From Podarcis cretensis (taxonomy: Eukaryota): a DNA stretch of 64,000 nt. The notes under the pieces were generated by a model, which saw only the letters and a program-made list of their open reading frames with translations, ran no database searches and was not told the origin of the DNA. The translations under genes and the position numbers were made by a program. The stretch lies in the NCBI GenBank assembly GCA_951804945.1, contig OX638159.1:3162001-3226000 (forward strand), in the 5' to 3' direction. The stretch's first letter is position 1. Each line of letters starts with the position of its first letter. Below are positions 11,471 through 58,016 of the stretch, piece by piece.

Positions 11471-12889
11471 CCTTACTGCTGCTACTACTAGTACCACCAC
11501 TAGTAGTAGTAGCAGCAGCAGCAGCATTAGAAGTAGTACTACCATTAGTACACAGTTTGAGAATCTGGGACTTTCTTTTGTCAAAACAACTGCAGAAACA
11601 GAAATCAGATTACCAATTGGGTTCTATTTGTCACACTCAATAATTGTGGAAAGCTTTCATCAAAACTGCCAATCCTACATATATTTCTGTGAGGATGTTT
11701 TGTTCTATTAGAAATGAAGAAACAATAAGGGGAGAGTGTTTGTTTTTTGTAGCCTTCAGTTTGTATTTCGTTTTGTGCAGTGTTCTTTATAGCATTTTTT
11801 AATATTTTTAGTAGCCCACAGCAAGGTCATCATGATGAAAGGTCATCTGAAGATGCAGATGCTCCTCTGCCACAAAAGGCACCAGGGTCCTGCAACTGCC
11901 AAGCATGCTCTGTGGTCACTCTAAGAGGAGGGAATGGCAAGCATGACAAGGAAAGGACGCAGGTGTCTGCTAAGGACATCTGAGCTCAGATGCCACCTGG
12001 GACCTCCAGCTTCCCTGCTCATTTCAGGACTTGTCCAGCCTAGTGCCTCCACTGAAGGTGGCAAAGTTGAAGGCAACCCATATGCCACAGAAGCAAAGGA
12101 GATGTGACGTACTGCCAAGGAAGGGCACTGCAGCTGCTGAAATGCAAGGCTGCCATTTCTGGAAATTTTGCCTGCACCACACTGCTTGGATTTGTAGGAC
12201 TATCAATGTGTGTGCACAAGTCATGGCGGCATTATGTTTTCTATATATTTTTTTAAACTTGCACATTCTGTGTAGAGAGCTGTAAGGCAATGTGGTGTTG
12301 AAGAGTTTTAATGTTTGATGTTTTATTGTGCTTTTATATTTGTTGGAAGCTGCCCAGGGCGGTTGGGGCAACCCAGTCAGATGTTCAGGGTACCAAAAAA
12401 AGAAAATTATTATTAAATTATTATTTGATGCAAATATGTAAAACAACTATGCATTTTGTAGAAAAAAAGAGTTTGGAAAGTAAGCCTCCAAATCATTTCA
12501 TGCATTTATTCATTCTCTGCCCTTTACCCTAAGGTCCTAAGGCAGGTTACAGCAGTATTAAAATGATTACACAATATTAAAATGATTTTAAATGGCTTCC
12601 AACTATAAAAACAAGGTGCTCCTAATAATATACTGTACACTTCAAGTGTCAAAAGTTGGGGCAAAGAGATGTGTCTTCAGCATTCCCTGAAAGCTGTATA
12701 ATGAAGGTGCCAGACACAGCGCTCTGGGGAGGGAGCACCAAAGCTTAGGGGAGTGCCCTGTCCCAGGTTGCCATCCCTGCCCCCCAAGCTTCTTAGGGCA
12801 GAGGGACTACCAAGAGCCTCCTCTGCTGATCTCAGTACCTACAAGGGTCTATAGAGAAGGACGTCTTTCAGATATGTCTACATTAAATG

Positions 12890-26686: not shown

Positions 26687-27295
26687 AGATGTTTCACTTT
26701 CTCAATGGGATTGCAAGGAAATTATGCAAAGCAAGTTTGACATGATAGACTGCTAAGCAAGGACTGGTTCACACTCATGTGATTTAACCATACATACATA
26801 CATGCATACAGTGGAGAAACAAAGTCACTCATATGTCCCAGCCACAGGAGCAGTGTACTATGGGTAGGATCCAATGAAGTCATTGTTAGCAGGATGACTT
26901 CTGCTTGTGCAATGAAGTGTCCCCTTGCTTTCCTTTCTTGCACCCACCCAAAACTGCTCCAAGGCATTGGTGGGGAACCCAGTGAAGATCTGGAGGTGTG
27001 TGTGGAGGGACTAGAGGGAGGGGAAGTTCAGTTGTGCAAGAGGAAGTTGTTCCACTCACACTATGACTTTGTTAGATACAACCCAGCGTGCTCTGAGCAA
27101 GGCTGCTGTGAAGCAATTGGAATTGAATGGTTGAACTGTGCACTTTGGTACCATTGTGACTCATGTCTCAGTCCTACATATGTTAAAGGAAGAAAGTTTC
27201 ATTAAAAAGAAACATTGATTTTTTTCCCAAATAACCTGTTCAGGAATGGGATGGAAAGCATTCTGTACTAGGCAGAGGGCACCCTCGGTAGTGGC

Positions 27296-27706
27296 TGTGG
27301 AGTTTGGAACAGACAGGGTTAAAACTCCGTGGTGCCCTGCATCTGGGAGGGGCCGGAAGCAGGGCTTTACGTCACAGGCTTTGTCTGTGAGAGTTACTTT
27401 CAGTTCTACCGAGAGACACTGAGAGACACAGCTAAACAGACAGGCTGTGTCTGTGTGCTTTTGGGAAGCACGGAGAGATGCCAGAATGGCGGAGGCTTCT
27501 GACGGGAAAAAGACTGATTTATGGCTTGTAAATAAACTCTTCTAAAGATAAGAACCGATCTGTCTTTTGGACTTGATTTATCCCTTTCTCACATGGACTC
27601 AGGACCGCTGCATTACTCTGCTATCCTACCAGGTCAGAGCTTCCTAGCAGAGAAGGCTCAGAGGAAGCGTGACTGGACGGTGAATTTATATTCAGTTACC
27701 AGCAAA
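27296..27706 (+). repeat. 5' LTR (411 bp)
   Basis: Direct repeat of 32048-32453; ETS-like CCGGAAG (27353-27359), CRE-like TTACGTCA (27367-27374), YY1-like AATGGCGG (27485-27492), AATAAA (27531-27536). Confidence 0.95.
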
Positions 27707-27729
27707 GGTTATGGACATTACGTGTTTCC
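27707..27729 (+). promoter_or_regulatory. Primer-binding site, half-tRNAiMet (Drosophila copia) type
   Basis: GGTTATGGacattaCGTGTTTCC immediately after the LTR, compared with GGTTATGGGCCCAGCACGCTTCC (complement of the internal 5' half of vertebrate initiator tRNA-Met, sequence recalled). Confidence 0.7.
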
Positions 27730-27899
27730 TGATAAGTGTGAGAAGGGAGGAGAACGCCAGCTTTGAGTTGCTGTGATCTCCTGCCAGGAAGGGCAGTGGG
27801 AGACGCTGGGGAGCGGAGCCAAGAGCCAAGAGAGACGGCTGCTTCGGACGTCCAGCTTGCTGGCAGAGTGAGTACGCTGAAAGCCCCGGGGGGAGGAGA

Positions 27900-30800
27900 A
27901 TGGCTGCTGCTCAGGCACAGCAGGGCCAAGACAGCTACCCCGGTGAAAGGCTCAGTGGGGCCAACTGGAAGGCCTGGAGTGAGCACATGTACCACTGGCT
28001 GAAGGGAAAGGAGCTGTGGGAATGCACGCAAGTCGATCCAGCCCAGGCCCAGGCCCAGCCCAAAGCAGACATGGCTGATGCTCTAGAGAGAGAGCAAAGG
28101 GTGCTGGCCATTTTAAAGGGCAGCGTTCATGCCTGGCTGTTGCCAGAGCTCCAAGGGAAGACGCCCTGGGTTGCGTGGCAGGCACTGAAGACAGCATGTC
28201 AGAAAGCAGTGGGAGCCAGGCCAGAGGGGGCTAGAAGATGCCCAAAGGGAGCAGCAAGCCCAGGAGGGGCTGAGCAACGCCCAGAAAGCCCAGAAGAAGC
28301 TGGGGCTGTTTTGGGAGGCTGTTTTTATGCTTCAACACATCTGAGTGATGGACTGTGTCCTGGAGAAAGGCTGGGAGCTGGAAAGAGGAAAGCAGTGGCA
28401 AGCTGTTCCTTAGGCGACGTGGCACCCAGGAGTGGGGGTGCAGGCCGTTCCGAGAGCTCTGAGAAAGCCAAAGTCTCCAAGAGTTGTTTGTGCTTTGAGG
28501 CGAAGTCCAACAGCAAAGGGCATTGTTCTGCTGAGGCTCTGGAATGCAAGGTCAGCCACCTGCAAGGAAGGCAGATAAGCAGTGATTCGCAGACAACAGA
28601 GCCTGGGAACAGCAGCAGCAGCCGTGCAGTAACCATGGCAACCAGGATGGACACTGGCATTGACACAGACCCCGGTGGGGGTGCGAGCGTTGCCATGGCA
28701 GCTTTGGAAGACAGCCAGAGAGACACTTTATCTCTAATTATCGATACGGGAGCCGCTCACTGTCTTGTGCCATCTGGTGGGCTCCTGAGGAACTGCAAGA
28801 CAGTTAAAACTGGACGTTATGTCAAAATGGCAGATGGATCTAAGAGACCACTGACTGAATCTGGGTCTTTATATTGTTCTTTCTTGGATTGTTGGGTGCA
28901 AGCTTATGTTGTCCCAGAGCTTGCGCACTCTCTTTTAAGTGTAACAGCCTTAAATGATGCTGGGTTCGATGTTCGTTTTTCTAACACTTGTTGTTCCTTC
29001 TACAGGGATGGAAAGAAGATCTACAGTGTTGAGAGAACAGACAGGCTCTTTCTGGTGCAGATGCCTATTGAAAATGGGGTTGGTGGAAAAATGGGACTAA
29101 TGGAAAATGGGACTGGTGGAAAAATGGGGCTGGTGGAAAATGGGGCTAGTGAAGAGTCCATTGAAGATGCCCATGTGCAGTGTGCAAATGTCCCACCACA
29201 CGATGGTTGTATTCACTTGTGGCACCGAAAATTCGGGCACGCTGGGTGGTCACTTGTGAGAAAAGCCGCAGAGAACACCATTGGGTGTAGGTTCAAGGCT
29301 TGTGGCAAATACCTAGATTGTCAAGCCTGTAAGCAGTCGAAGGTTACAACTTGCCCATATCCCAGATCAGAGAGGAGAACAAGCAAACCCTTTGAACTTG
29401 TCCATGCAGATTTGTCAGGTCCCATGCCGACACCTTCTTTAGCTGGGTCTAAGTGGGTTCTAGTTCTGATTGACGATTTTTCGAAATTTAGTTGGGTTTT
29501 TGCGCTTAAATGCAAGTCAGAAGCGGCTACATTGATCAGGGACTGGATCACAGCGATAGAGCTACAGTTCTCTACCAGGGTGATTTCCTTTCAATCTGAT
29601 CATGGGGGGGGGGGGAGTTTACAGGTTCTGCGCTGCAATCGTTTTTCAGGCAGAAGGGTATCAATCATCGATTGTCTGCCCCCTACAGTCCGCAACAGAA
29701 CGGGATTGCAGAGAGAAAGTTTTGCACATTACAGGAATCTGTGAATGCTATGCTGGCAGACTCGGGTTTGCCACAGTGCTTTTGGGCAGAGAGTTATCGG
29801 ACAGCATGTTTTGTACAGAATAGGGTGTACAATTCCAGTGTAGGCAACACACCGTATTACTTGTTGCATCAGAAGAAGCCGAAGGTGGGGTTTCTCCATG
29901 TTTTTGGTTCTGAGGCTTGGGTCCTCATTCCAAAAGCCATGCGCAGAAAGGGTGAGCCAAGGTCTAGGAAGATGATCTTTGTGGGCTATGAGCCGGGTTC
30001 AAAGGCGTGGCGTTTCGCATACCCTACTGGCAACCAGTCTAAGCTGCTTATTAGCGGCAGTGCTGAGTTTTGCGAGCAGAGTGGGTGGAAGTGTCTTCAC
30101 GGGAACCCAGATGTTCTGTCAGACTCAGATGAGGAAGAGGAGGAAGGCGAAGCTGAACCTGTTGCTGATGTGCGCGGTCCACAGCAACAGGGTCCAGTGC
30201 CAGTTTCTCCAAAAGGGAGTCCCAGGACCCCTCCACAGGTCACTGTCAAGTCTGAGCTAAGGAGTGCACCATCCTCACCAGCAGAACCAGCTGTACGTCC
30301 GAAATGGCGCAGCAGGTCAGAGGGGGATGTGTCAGACACAGAGGATAGTAGGGTTGATCCAGGTGAATCAGGCGCAGTTCCAGAATTCATGCTGAGGAGG
30401 TCAGCAAGATCAACGAAGGGAAAGCCACCTGAAAGGTATGAAGCCACTAGTGTCTGGGTTGGTGTGGCTAGATGTGAGCCTGAATCCTTTGAGGATGTTC
30501 AGGAGTTGCCTCAGGAAGAAGCTAGCAAATGGCGTGAGGCGATGCAGAAGGAGATGAACTCAATGGAGTCTCTAGGTGTGTTCTCTCTCACGAAGTTGCC
30601 GATGGGCGAAAAAGCTGTTAGCTGCAGATGGGTTTACCGTTTGAAACCCACAGAAGCAGGAGAACCACAGTATAAAGCGAGATTAGTGGCCCGAGGATTC
30701 ACACAGAGGAAGGGTGTCCATTTCACAGAGGTATATTCGCCAACCTCGAGAGCGGAGACTCTGAGAAAGCTTTTGGCGATAGCAGCACAGAGAGGTTGGA

Positions 30801-32174
30801 AGGTGAACCATTTTGATGTAGATGTCGCCTACCTGAACTCAGATCTCAAGGAGGAGTTGTACATGCTTCCTCCTCCAGGGTTTGAAGTCAGTGAGCCAGG
30901 CGTTGTGTGGCAGTTGCACAAATCCATCTATGGATTACGTCAATCTGCCAGGAATTGGAATATGTGCCTACATGAAGCCTTAGAAGAGCTAGGTTTTAAG
31001 AGATCTCTTGCAGACAGTTGTCTTTACATTAAAGAGTCAGGCTTAAGTGATCCAGGTGTTTGTTGACGACCTTTTGATCATGGCACAGACAGGTAAACAG
31101 GTGGAAAAGTTTGCTAGAGAGCTTGGAAAGCGGTTCAAGCTGAAGCAGCTTGGAGATGTCAAATCCTATTTGGGCGTGCAGATCACAAAAGCAAGTGATG
31201 GAAGCTTCTTGCTTTGCCAGAAAGGTAAGATTGAACAGTTGCTTGAGAAGTTCAGGATGTCTGAGTGTGCAGGTGCCAGATCACCCATGGAGGCTGGTTT
31301 TGTAAAGGAGTGTCAGCAAGTAGAACGTGTGGTGTTCGAAAACACTGAGCTCTTTCAGTCAGCTCTGGGTAGTCTGTTGTATCTGTCACAGTGGAGCAGA
31401 CCAGATATAGCGTTTGCTGTCAATCTGCTCAGTAGAGAGGCCTCAAGTCCTAGTGTGCAGGCCTGGAATGGTATAAAGCGGGTGCTGCGTTACCTGCAAG
31501 ATACCAAAGACTTTTGTCTTAAGTTGTCAGCTCAAGGAGATGTCAAGCTGACTGCTTGGGTGGACTCGGATTGGGCTAACCTTGAGGATCGCAAATCAGT
31601 GTCAGGTCTAGTGGTGAAGTTTGGGGACTCAGTAATTGGGTGGAGGTCCTGGAAGCAAAGTCTCATAGCGCTTTCGTCTACTGAAGCTGAGTTCAGTGCG
31701 CTATCAGATGCTTGCAGAGAGTTGGAGTTCTATGTGTGTTTGGTCGAGGAAATCTGTGGAGAAAATTGTCTGCCCGTTGTGGTGCATGAAGACAATCAAC
31801 CGTGCCTTAAATTGGCTGAGACAGGGCAATTCAAGGCGAGGACCAAACATTTGGACATACGTTTTCAAAATGTGTGTCAGAGCGCTCGTGAGGGGCTAGT
31901 TGCTCTGAAATACTGTCCCTCAACCAAGAACCTCGCTGATGGTTTCACAAAACCATTAACCTTCCAGAAGCACAAGGAGTTCTGTGAGGGTTTGTGTATG
32001 GGGAAAGCATTGTTGGCTATCGTCCCCAGATGCAGGACAAGAGGGGGTGTGGAGTTTGGAACAGACAGGGTTAAAACTCCGTGGTGCCCTGCATCTGGGA
32101 GGGGCCGGAAGCAGGGCTTTACGTCACAGGCTTTGTCTGTGAGAGTTACTTTCAGTTCTACCGAGAGACGCTGA
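27900..32174 (+). pseudogene. Copia Gag-Pol polyprotein in three frames (two frameshifts)
   Basis: Gag N-terminus (LSGANWKAWSEHM..KELW), protease IIDTGAAH, integrase HHCC (LWHRKFGH..CQAC) and D-D-E (HADLSGP, QSDHGG, NGIAER), RT (SCRWVYRLK..YKARLVARGFTQ, LHKSIYGLRQS, FVDD), RNase H (VDSDWA, EAEF, EDNQ, ADGFTKPL); shifts at G12 run 29604-29615 and about 31040-31048. Confidence 0.95.
32033..32047 (+). promoter_or_regulatory. Polypurine tract
   Basis: CAGGACAAGAGGGGG directly before the TG of the 3' LTR. Confidence 0.85.
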
Positions 32175-32453
32175 GAGACACAGCTAAACAGACAGGCTGT
32201 GTCTGTGTGCTTTTGGGAAGCACGGAGAGATGCCAGAATGGCGGAGGCTTCTGACGGGAAAAAGACTGATTTATGGCTTGTAAATAAACTCTTCTAAAGA
32301 TAAGAACCGATCTGTCTTTTGGACTTGATTTATCCCTTTCTCACATGGACTCAGGACCGCTGCATTACTCTGCTACCAGGTCAGAGCTTCCTAGCAGAGA
32401 AGGCTCAGAGGAAGCGTGACTGGACGGTGAATTTATATTCAATTACCAGCAAA
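32048..32453 (+). repeat. 3' LTR (406 bp)
   Basis: Differs from the 5' LTR by 2 substitutions and a 5-bp indel (visual alignment). Confidence 0.95.
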
Positions 32454-32652
32454 GTGGCACCCTCCCTGTGGAACACCTTCCCTTCAGATGTCAAGGAGAT
32501 AAAGAACTACATAACTTTTAGAAGACATCTGAAGGCAACCCTTTATTGGGAAATTTTTAATGTCTGATGCTTTACTATATTTTTATATATATTGTAAGCT
32601 GCCCACAGTGGCTGGGGAAACCCAGTCAGATGGGTGGGGTATAAATAATAAA

Positions 32653-32686
<34 letters not shown>

Positions 32687-32697
32687 TTACTACTACT
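32454..32697 (+). mobile_element. L2 3' end (host of the copia insertion; its 5' part lies at about 27270-27295) with (TAC)n tail
   Basis: Joining the flanks restores GGCAGAGGGC..CTCGGTAGTGGCACCCTCCCTGTGGAAC; the end matches the L2-type terminus at about 12300-12420. Confidence 0.75.
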
Positions 32698-33048
32698 AGA
32701 TTGCTTTTCTCTGGGTGGATGACAGAACTATGCCAGACGTTTCACTTTTTTGTTGATCTTAGTAGTCTCATAACTTTTTGGGCATACTGAAGTCAAAACT
32801 GCTGCACATGCTTAGCCATTTCAGACACAATATTCCCAAGGTCTCTAGCCCCTTTTATTTTCAATATAGACCTATTCACATTCATCACAATATGCCACAC
32901 ATATGCTCCACATGTGTACTAAACTGCCACAAGAAATAGATTTGGAAGGAGAGTGTTGACCATTTGTACTCACAGTGAAAGAAGGGAGAAGCGGAGGGGG
33001 AAATAGCCAAAAAGGGAAATCAACTTCAACTTTTCATGACCTCTAAAT

Positions 33049-57500: not shown

Positions 57501-57712
57501 NNNNNNNNNNNNNNNNNNNNNNNNNNNNNNNNNNNNNNNNNNNNNNNNNNNNNNNNNNNNNNNNNNNNNNNNNNNNNNNNNNNNNNNNNNNNNNNNNNNN
57601 NNNNNNNNNNNNNNNNNNNNNNNNNNNNNNNNNNNNNNNNNNNNNNNNNNNNNNNNNNNNNNNNNNNNNNNNNNNNNNNNNNNNNNNNNNNNNNNNNNNN
57701 NNNNNNNNNNNN
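57501..57712. other. Assembly gap
   Basis: Run of N. Confidence 1.
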
Positions 57713-57852: not shown

Positions 57853-58016
57853 NNNNNNNNNNNNNNNNNNNNNNNNNNNNNNNNNNNNNNNNNNNNNNNN
57901 NNNNNNNNNNNNNNNNNNNNNNNNNNNNNNNNNNNNNNNNNNNNNNNNNNNNNNNNNNNNNNNNNNNNNNNNNNNNNNNNNNNNNNNNNNNNNNNNNNNN
58001 NNNNNNNNNNNNNNNN
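57853..58016. other. Assembly gap
   Basis: Run of N. Confidence 1.

What the first reader, a model, noticed from the sequence alone, without database searches (positions are those of the whole stretch)
27296..32453. Recently active, full-length Ty1/copia retrotransposon in an amniote genome
Seen: PR-IN-RT-RH domain order, catalytic residues intact, 5-bp TSD, LTRs differing by only 2 substitutions and one 5-bp indel, no in-frame stops and two frameshifts (one in a G12 homopolymer that could be slippage or assembly error). Known: Ty1/copia is abundant in plants, fungi and insects, essentially absent from mammals and birds, and sparse in reptiles. Inference: a lineage that was transposing very recently in this lizard, possibly acquired horizontally from an arthropod.
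Basis: partly seen in the sequence, partly recalled or inferred. Interest (0 to 1): 0.8.

Follow-up and report, generated by a model that had tools for sequence, protein, structure and literature searches.

The report
Young, broken copia retrotransposon in lizard
This is a real, recently inserted but defective copy of a Ty1/copia retrotransposon family that already lives in lizards and snakes, so it is an ordinary member of a known kind and shows no sign of a recent arrival from an arthropod.

Summary
The element spans 27296-32453. It has a 411-nt and a 406-nt LTR that differ by 2 transitions and one 5-nt indel. It has a 5-bp target duplication (GTGGC), the order PR-IN-RT-RH with catalytic motifs present, and two frame breaks: one in the G12 run at 29604-29615, one near 31040-31048.

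"Full-length" needs a caveat. Gag keeps only its N-terminal ~100 residues. The copia capsid domain and a canonical zinc knuckle are missing.

- The insertion is young, about 1-5 Myr old. It is present in one coded organism and apparently absent at the same site in two close relatives.
- The family is not exotic. Its nearest named relative is an annotated polyprotein of the lizard Podarcis lilfordi (86-88% identical over RT and RNase H).
- Every named member of its clade is a squamate. Named arthropod and nematode copia are at most 39% identical, across a branch with 100/100 support.
- Related contigs at 90-95% identity outnumber near-identical ones, which points to long residence in the genome.
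- Published work already reports catalogued, expanding, expressed and mutagenic Copia in squamates.

The scan has also noted similar young copia elements on other pieces of this genome. Interest is low.

The parts
27262..27295 (+). 5' part of the host repeat (a 5'-truncated SINE-like copy) that was the insertion target. Its last 5 nt (27291-27295, GTGGC) form the left copy of the target-site duplication.
   Evidence: In one search, loose-end consensus from other copies of the abundant repeat reads through from this sequence into the 3' flank.
27296..27706 (+). 5' LTR, 411 nt. It starts TG and ends ...CAAA, and has an AATAAA signal at 27531.
27707..27724 (+). Primer-binding-site region. Its first 8 nt (GGTTATGG) match, from memory, the start of the Drosophila copia PBS, which pairs with the anticodon-loop end of a 5' half of initiator tRNA-Met.
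   Evidence: Sequence. The tRNA match rests on recalled sequence and was not tested with a tool.
27900..29603 (+). ORF piece 1. It holds the Gag N-terminal ~100 aa, then a low-complexity stretch in place of the capsid core and zinc knuckle. Protease (DTGA at about 28743) and the integrase zinc-binding H..H/C..C and first two catalytic D follow.
29604..29615 (+). G12 homopolymer inside the integrase core. This is the first frame break.
   Evidence: In one search a contig of organism B has a run of different length here.
29615..31042 (+). ORF piece 2 (other frame). It holds the integrase catalytic E and C-terminal SH3-like domain, an acidic/Pro-rich linker, and the N-terminal two thirds of the reverse transcriptase.
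31040..31048 (+). Second frame break, just upstream of the RT FVDD motif. This copy lacks a short stretch that family contigs of organisms A and B carry here.
31047..32174 (+). ORF piece 3. It holds the rest of the RT (FVDD at 31062-31073) and RNase H. There is no stop before the LTR, so the reading frame ends inside the 3' LTR.
32034..32047 (+). Polypurine tract directly before the 3' LTR.
32048..32453 (+). 3' LTR, 406 nt.
32454..32700 (+). Right copy of the TSD (32454-32458, GTGGC), followed by the rest of the very abundant SINE-like host repeat with an (ACT)n tail.
   Evidence: In one search, summed depth in the 32472-32670 bin (covering this repeat) is about 10^4 times that of the unique flank.

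Best explanation
This is one young, defective copy of a Ty1/copia (Pseudoviridae-type) LTR retrotransposon family that is resident and multi-copy in this lizard and its relatives.

Mechanism (inferred from the anatomy and from what is known of copia):
- An RNA transcribed from a source copy was reverse-transcribed, probably primed by a 5' half of initiator tRNA-Met at the PBS next to the 5' LTR, with plus strands primed from the polypurine tract.
- The integrase inserted the DNA into a SINE copy and made a 5-bp duplication.

That happened roughly 1-5 Myr ago, after the host lineage split from two close relatives that lack the insertion.

The copy now carries two frame breaks, in the integrase core and in the RT palm. 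Its family has a Gag without a recognisable capsid core or zinc knuckle. This copy therefore cannot move by itself.

The lineage belongs to a squamate clade of copia elements and was inherited within squamates, not recently acquired from an arthropod.
For: - Structure: LTRs, TSD, PBS, PPT and domains are all present.
- Target: the flanks join into one SINE copy with exactly 5 bp duplicated.
- Filled site: a contig of organism A is identical over the 5' flank and runs 28 nt into the LTR.
- Likely empty site: contigs of organisms B and D match the flank at 98.2-98.7%. They stop matching at 27289 and 27295, with 24 and 17 further letters that are not LTR (table 8).
- Family size and age: internal summed depth is tens of times the unique flank depth. 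Contigs laid in organism A number 817 at >=99%, 2882 at 95-99% and 8396 at 90-95%.
- Spread: 31-mers of the element occur in runs carrying about 10 different species labels.
- Relatives: Podarcis lilfordi polyprotein P0298 is 76/86/88% identical to the three pieces. A second lizard lineage is P0146/P0299. There is also a corn snake protein, P0167.
- Trees: window element + P0298 has 100/100 support, the lizard clade 99/98, and the split from all named arthropod, nematode and plant rows 100/100.
- Literature: PMC4350176, PMC4657000, PMC8872380.
Against:
- Only two squamate species are named in the clade, so congruence with the host tree could not be tested.
- No fish, amphibian, turtle or tuatara copia were available as named rows.
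- The empty-site reading in organisms B and D rests on where contigs stop matching. I could not see the letters.
- Neither frame break was checked against raw reads of the assembled individual. The G-run break could be an assembly error.
Confidence: 0.85

Rival explanations
1. The family entered this lizard lineage recently by horizontal transfer from an arthropod (prey or parasite) and then amplified.
For: Only general points support it: copia is abundant in arthropods, and this copy is young. Some close relatives are unnamed, so a non-squamate holder cannot be fully excluded.
Against: - The best named arthropod hits (pseudoscorpion, mosquito, ant, spider) are 35-36% identical over IN-RT-RH. 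Squamate relatives are 58-88% identical.
- A branch with 100/100 support and length 0.34 separates the squamate-containing clade from all named arthropod rows.
- The genome holds many diverged relatives at 90-95% identity, as expected of long residence.
- Near-identical words occur in about 10 species labels.
Confidence: 0.03
2. The copy is intact and still autonomous. Both frame breaks would then be assembly errors, one of them homopolymer miscalling.
For: The first break lies in a 12-nt G run, a classic error site. Run length differs in a contig of organism B. At the second break the only contig laid there in organism A carries the stretch that the window lacks, so the assembled version was not seen independently.
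Against: - The second break is not in a homopolymer.
- Contigs drop rare variants, so not seeing the window's version is weak evidence.
- Even with open frames, Gag lacks the copia capsid domain and a canonical zinc knuckle.
- The LTRs also differ by a 5-nt indel, so small indels have really accumulated in this copy.
Confidence: 0.08
3. The element belongs to a Gag-defective sublineage that does not make its own capsid and is moved in trans by the Gag of canonical copia families in the same genome. This is a refinement of the best explanation, not an exclusive rival.
For: - Retrotran_gag_2 is absent here at E<=1 but strong in P0298 (1.4e-30) and P0146 (8.6e-28).
- The capsid core is not found in any frame.
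- The remodelled region 28094-28491 is covered by family contigs at several times single-copy depth in organisms A, B and D. It is therefore shared by several copies and species, not private damage.
- Canonical copia with full Gag exist in lizards.
Against: - A short, divergent Gag might still work.
- Depth summed over contigs is a poor copy count.
- No canonical-Gag copy from this same genome was examined here.
Confidence: 0.35

Closest known systems
Copia polyprotein annotated in the lizard Podarcis lilfordi (P0298, 'Retrovirus-related Pol polyprotein from transposon TNT 1-94', 1376 aa)
   Same: It has the same domain order and the same catalytic motifs. It is 76% (PR-IN), 86% (IN-RT) and 88% (RT-RH) identical and is sister in the tree with 100/100 support.
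   Different: P0298 has a full copia Gag (Retrotran_gag_2, 1.4e-30) and a CCHC knuckle. The window element has neither. At about 86% aa identity it is a related family, not the same one.
Squamate Copia families already catalogued or studied: Repbase Copia-6 of Anolis carolinensis, the 5.8-kb Copia insertion in corn snake OCA2 (PMC4657000), and Copia subfamilies expanding and expressed in hydrophiine snakes (PMC8872380)
   Same: The same superfamily in the same host order, with similar size (5-6 kb) and evidence of very recent transposition.
   Different: No nucleotide library (Repbase or Dfam) was available here, so identity with a named family could not be tested. The corn snake protein found here (P0167) is only about 40% identical.
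Drosophila copia, the type element of Ty1/copia
   Same: Both have PR-IN-RT-RH order, a 5-bp TSD, and a PBS that starts directly after the LTR with the same 8 nt. That PBS implies priming by a 5' half of initiator tRNA-Met (from memory: Kikuchi et al. 1986).
   Different: It is very distant in sequence: named insect copia are no more than about 39% identical. Beyond the first 8 nt the PBS has drifted. The LTR ends in CAAA rather than CA, and Gag is remodelled.

Membership tests
Ty1/copia LTR retrotransposons (Pseudoviridae) | Integrase lies upstream of reverse transcriptase (PR-IN-RT-RH) | tested here: met
   Pfam order along the element is Pol_BBD, gag_pre-integrs, rve, SH3_retrovirus, RVT_2.
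Ty1/copia LTR retrotransposons (Pseudoviridae) | RT of the copia type (Pfam RVT_2) that places among copia elements in a tree | tested here: met
   RVT_2 scores 4.7e-50 and 3.8e-14 on the two RT pieces.
Ty1/copia LTR retrotransposons (Pseudoviridae) | Two LTRs in direct orientation flanked by a 5-bp target-site duplication | tested here: met
   The TSD is GTGGC on both sides, and the flanks rejoin into one SINE copy.
Ty1/copia LTR retrotransposons (Pseudoviridae) | LTR termini TG...CA | tested here: not met
   The LTR starts TG but ends ...GCAAA if the TSD is 5 bp. This is a variant terminus and does not affect superfamily assignment.
Ty1/copia LTR retrotransposons (Pseudoviridae) | Gag with the copia capsid domain (Retrotran_gag_2), usually with a CCHC knuckle | tested here: not met
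   It is not detected at E<=1, while P0298 and P0146 score 1e-30 and 1e-27. It is not found in any frame. Only the N-terminal ~100 aa align.
Ty1/copia LTR retrotransposons (Pseudoviridae) | PBS complementary to initiator tRNA-Met (a 5' half in copia-like elements) and a PPT before the 3' LTR | tested here: inconclusive
   The PPT is present. The PBS shows an 8-nt match judged from recalled tRNA and copia sequence only. No tRNA gene was found in the window to compare with.
Autonomous, currently active element | Uninterrupted gag-pol reading frame | tested here: not met
   There are two frame breaks. They were not verified against raw reads.
Autonomous, currently active element | Near-identical LTRs and insertion absent from close relatives | tested here: met
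   LTR identity is 99.5%. The site is filled in organism A and apparently empty in organisms B and D. The empty state is inferred.
Horizontally transferred TE | Similarity to an element of a distant taxon far above what divergence time allows, with a tree incongruent with the hosts | tested here: not met
   Named non-squamate hits are at most 39% aa identical. All named members of the nearest clade are squamates. Sampling of other vertebrates was not possible.

The most novel reading that the evidence does not exclude
A copia sublineage that lost the capsid core and zinc knuckle of Gag has nevertheless kept transposing within the last few million years in at least three related lizards. It would do so either with a minimal Gag or by borrowing the Gag of canonical copia families in the same genome. 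That would make it a vertebrate example of Gag-parasitic, otherwise pol-competent LTR elements.
Probability: 0.3. Interest if true: 0.4.

Novelty: new member of a known kind. Interest (0 to 1): 0.15.

Why it matters
It matters little beyond annotation. The element adds a dated, well-delimited insertion to a copia family that is evidently still turning over in lizards. It could serve as a presence/absence marker between closely related species or populations. It also corrects the idea that a young copia in an amniote calls for horizontal transfer: squamates keep their own active copia lineages, as published work on anoles and snakes already shows. The one feature worth a specialist's second look is the remodelled Gag, which several copies share.

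Tried and rejected
- The first word-based protein search with the 464-aa piece could not see full-length polyproteins because of its length window. It gave mostly plant hits. I solved this by searching representatives and then re-searching with full-length hits.
- Cluster look-ups named only Podarcis lilfordi and Pantherophis guttatus among near relatives.
- Rfam found nothing around the element at E<=0.1 or in the whole window at gathering scores. ARAGORN found no tRNA gene.
- The window holds no second copia copy or solo LTR.
- A hidden double frameshift in gag was considered and rejected. The capsid core of three relatives matches no frame of the element.
I rebuilt it on the RT-RH columns.
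- The Anolis genome paper and the Anolis TE-profile paper are not held.
In scripts the element was read through with X at each break. The letters that other copies carry at the breaks are deliberately not given.
Full report
**What is there**

A direct-repeat search finds two long repeats 4.75 kb apart. When aligned, they are a 411-nt LTR (27296-27706) and a 406-nt LTR (32048-32453). They differ by two transitions, one at a CpG, and one 5-nt indel. GTGGC precedes the 5' LTR (27291-27295) and follows the 3' LTR (32454-32458).

A primer-binding region starts directly after the 5' LTR with GGTTATGG. A polypurine tract (32034-32047) lies directly before the 3' LTR. The LTR carries AATAAA at 27531. 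The element is G+C-richer than the rest of the window (50% against 42%).

**Coding content**

Three overlapping ORF pieces on the + strand cover 27900-32174.
- Piece 1 hits Pol_BBD, gag_pre-integrs and rve.
- Piece 2 hits SH3_retrovirus and RVT_2 (4.7e-50).
- Piece 3 hits the rest of RVT_2.

This is the copia order PR-IN-RT-RH. The translations show protease DTGA, the integrase H..H/C..C and two D, and the integrase E after the first break. They also show RT FVDD and the RNase H acidic residues. All of these align with invariant columns of relatives.

One is inside a 12-nt G run (29604-29615, in the integrase core). The other is at about 31040-31048, just before FVDD. The last piece has no stop before the LTR and ends at 32174.

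**A caveat to "full-length"**

Only the first ~100 residues of Gag align with relatives. Two lizard relatives have a strong Retrotran_gag_2 domain (1.4e-30 and 8.6e-28), and P0298 also shows weak, sub-threshold zinc-knuckle hits. The window element shows nothing at E<=1. The capsid core of three relatives matches no frame of the element, so this is not a hidden pair of frameshifts. Family contigs of three organisms cover this remodelled stretch at several times single-copy depth. It is therefore a trait of the sublineage, not private damage.

**Proof of integration and dating**

The 3' flank is a hugely abundant SINE-like repeat with an (ACT)n tail. Loose-end consensus from its other copies reads through from the sequence of the 5' flank. 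The element therefore sits inside one SINE copy, with exactly 5 bp duplicated.

LTR divergence is 2/406 = 0.49%. That gives about 1-5 Myr at 0.5-2.5e-9 substitutions per site per year, with a wide Poisson interval. The rates are assumed, not measured.

Evidence from contigs of public runs (coded names):
- Organism A has a contig identical over the 5' flank that runs 28 nt into the LTR.
- Organisms B and D have flank contigs at 98.2-98.7% identity. They stop matching at 27289 and at 27295 and continue for 24 and 17 letters that are not LTR (table 8).

I read this as filled in A and empty in B and D. That fits an insertion younger than the split of these hosts. The empty state is an inference, because the letters were not shown.

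**The two breaks**

At the G run, a contig of organism B has a run of different length. At the second break, contigs that represent most of the family in organisms A and B carry a short stretch that this copy lacks.

The breaks are therefore private to this copy or its near kin, or they are assembly errors. They are not family traits.

**The family**

The window holds no other copy. In the runs, summed depth over the internal region is tens of times that of the unique flank. Contigs at 90-95% identity (8396 in organism A) far outnumber those at 95-99% (2882) and at >=99% (817). Near-identical 31-mers occur in runs carrying about ten species labels. A 2958-nt contig of a run guessed to be RNA, from a further organism, is 94% identical over RT-RH-LTR. 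That is only a hint of expression.

The scan's own notes list several other ~5.0-5.2-kb young copia elements on other pieces of this genome. I did not check them, but they agree with the depth figures.

**Relatives and the transfer hypothesis**

- The representative search gave a best hit at 59% identity, and most other hits fell to 33-49%.
- Re-searching with full-length hits brought in an annotated polyprotein of the lizard Podarcis lilfordi (P0298, 1376 aa). It is 76%, 86% and 88% identical to the three pieces.
- A second lineage (P0146, P0299) is 58-67% identical. Its 90% cluster also holds Podarcis lilfordi proteins.
- A corn snake protein (P0167) is about 40% identical.
- The best named arthropod hits are 35-36% identical and the best named nematode hits (Trichuris, Trichinella) up to 39%.

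In a maximum-likelihood tree of the RT-RH columns, the window element was read with X at each break. It pairs with P0298 at 100/100. The lizard clade has 99/98 support. A 100/100 branch of length 0.34 separates the squamate-containing group from every named arthropod, nematode and plant row (quick tree).

None of the three usual signs of horizontal transfer is present. There is no excess similarity to a distant taxon and no incongruent tree. There is also no lack of old copies.

Named copia of fishes, amphibians, turtles and tuatara were not available.

**What is known**

- Copia is reported in fishes, amphibians and reptiles but not in birds and mammals. It is taken as part of the ancestral vertebrate mobilome (PMC4350176).
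- Corn snake amelanism is caused by a 5.8-kb Ty1/Copia insertion whose best Repbase hit is 'Copia-6' of Anolis carolinensis (PMC4657000).
- Copia makes up 0.5-1.65% of elapid genomes and is expanding and expressed in hydrophiine snakes (PMC8872380).

A young copia in a lizard is therefore expected.

**Verdict**

The reading "recent insertion" holds. "Possibly acquired from an arthropod" is not supported. This is a new member of a known kind, of low interest. The one point that may repay study is the Gag-poor sublineage that has still multiplied.

Noticed in passing
window 28200-28740: The Gag region after the first ~100 residues is a G+C-rich, low-complexity stretch with no copia capsid domain and only a degenerate knuckle-like C/H pattern. 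Family contigs in three organisms share it.
   Followed up: partly
window 27700-27724 and 32448-32458: The LTR ends in ...CAAA rather than CA if the TSD is 5 bp. The PBS matches the Drosophila copia PBS only over its first 8 nt and then drifts. These are noted separately as s1-836720 and s1-836691.
   Followed up: partly
window 31990-32174: The pol reading frame has no stop where relatives end, a few residues after the conserved ...FC.GL motif. It runs through the polypurine tract and 127 nt into the 3' LTR.
   Followed up: no
window 27262-27295 + 32454-32700: The insertion target is a 5'-truncated copy of an extremely abundant SINE-like repeat with an (ACT)n tail. Summed contig depth is about 10^4 times single copy. 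A 76% identical fragment lies at 12306-12415.
   Followed up: partly
window 57501-57712 and 57853-58016: Two runs of N (assembly gaps or masked stretches). They were left untouched.
   Followed up: no
protein P0167 (Pantherophis guttatus, 778 aa, four XP accessions): A corn snake 'uncharacterized protein LOC117676053' groups with the lizard copia clade on a very long branch (1.6). It could be a decayed or a domesticated copia pol.
   Followed up: no
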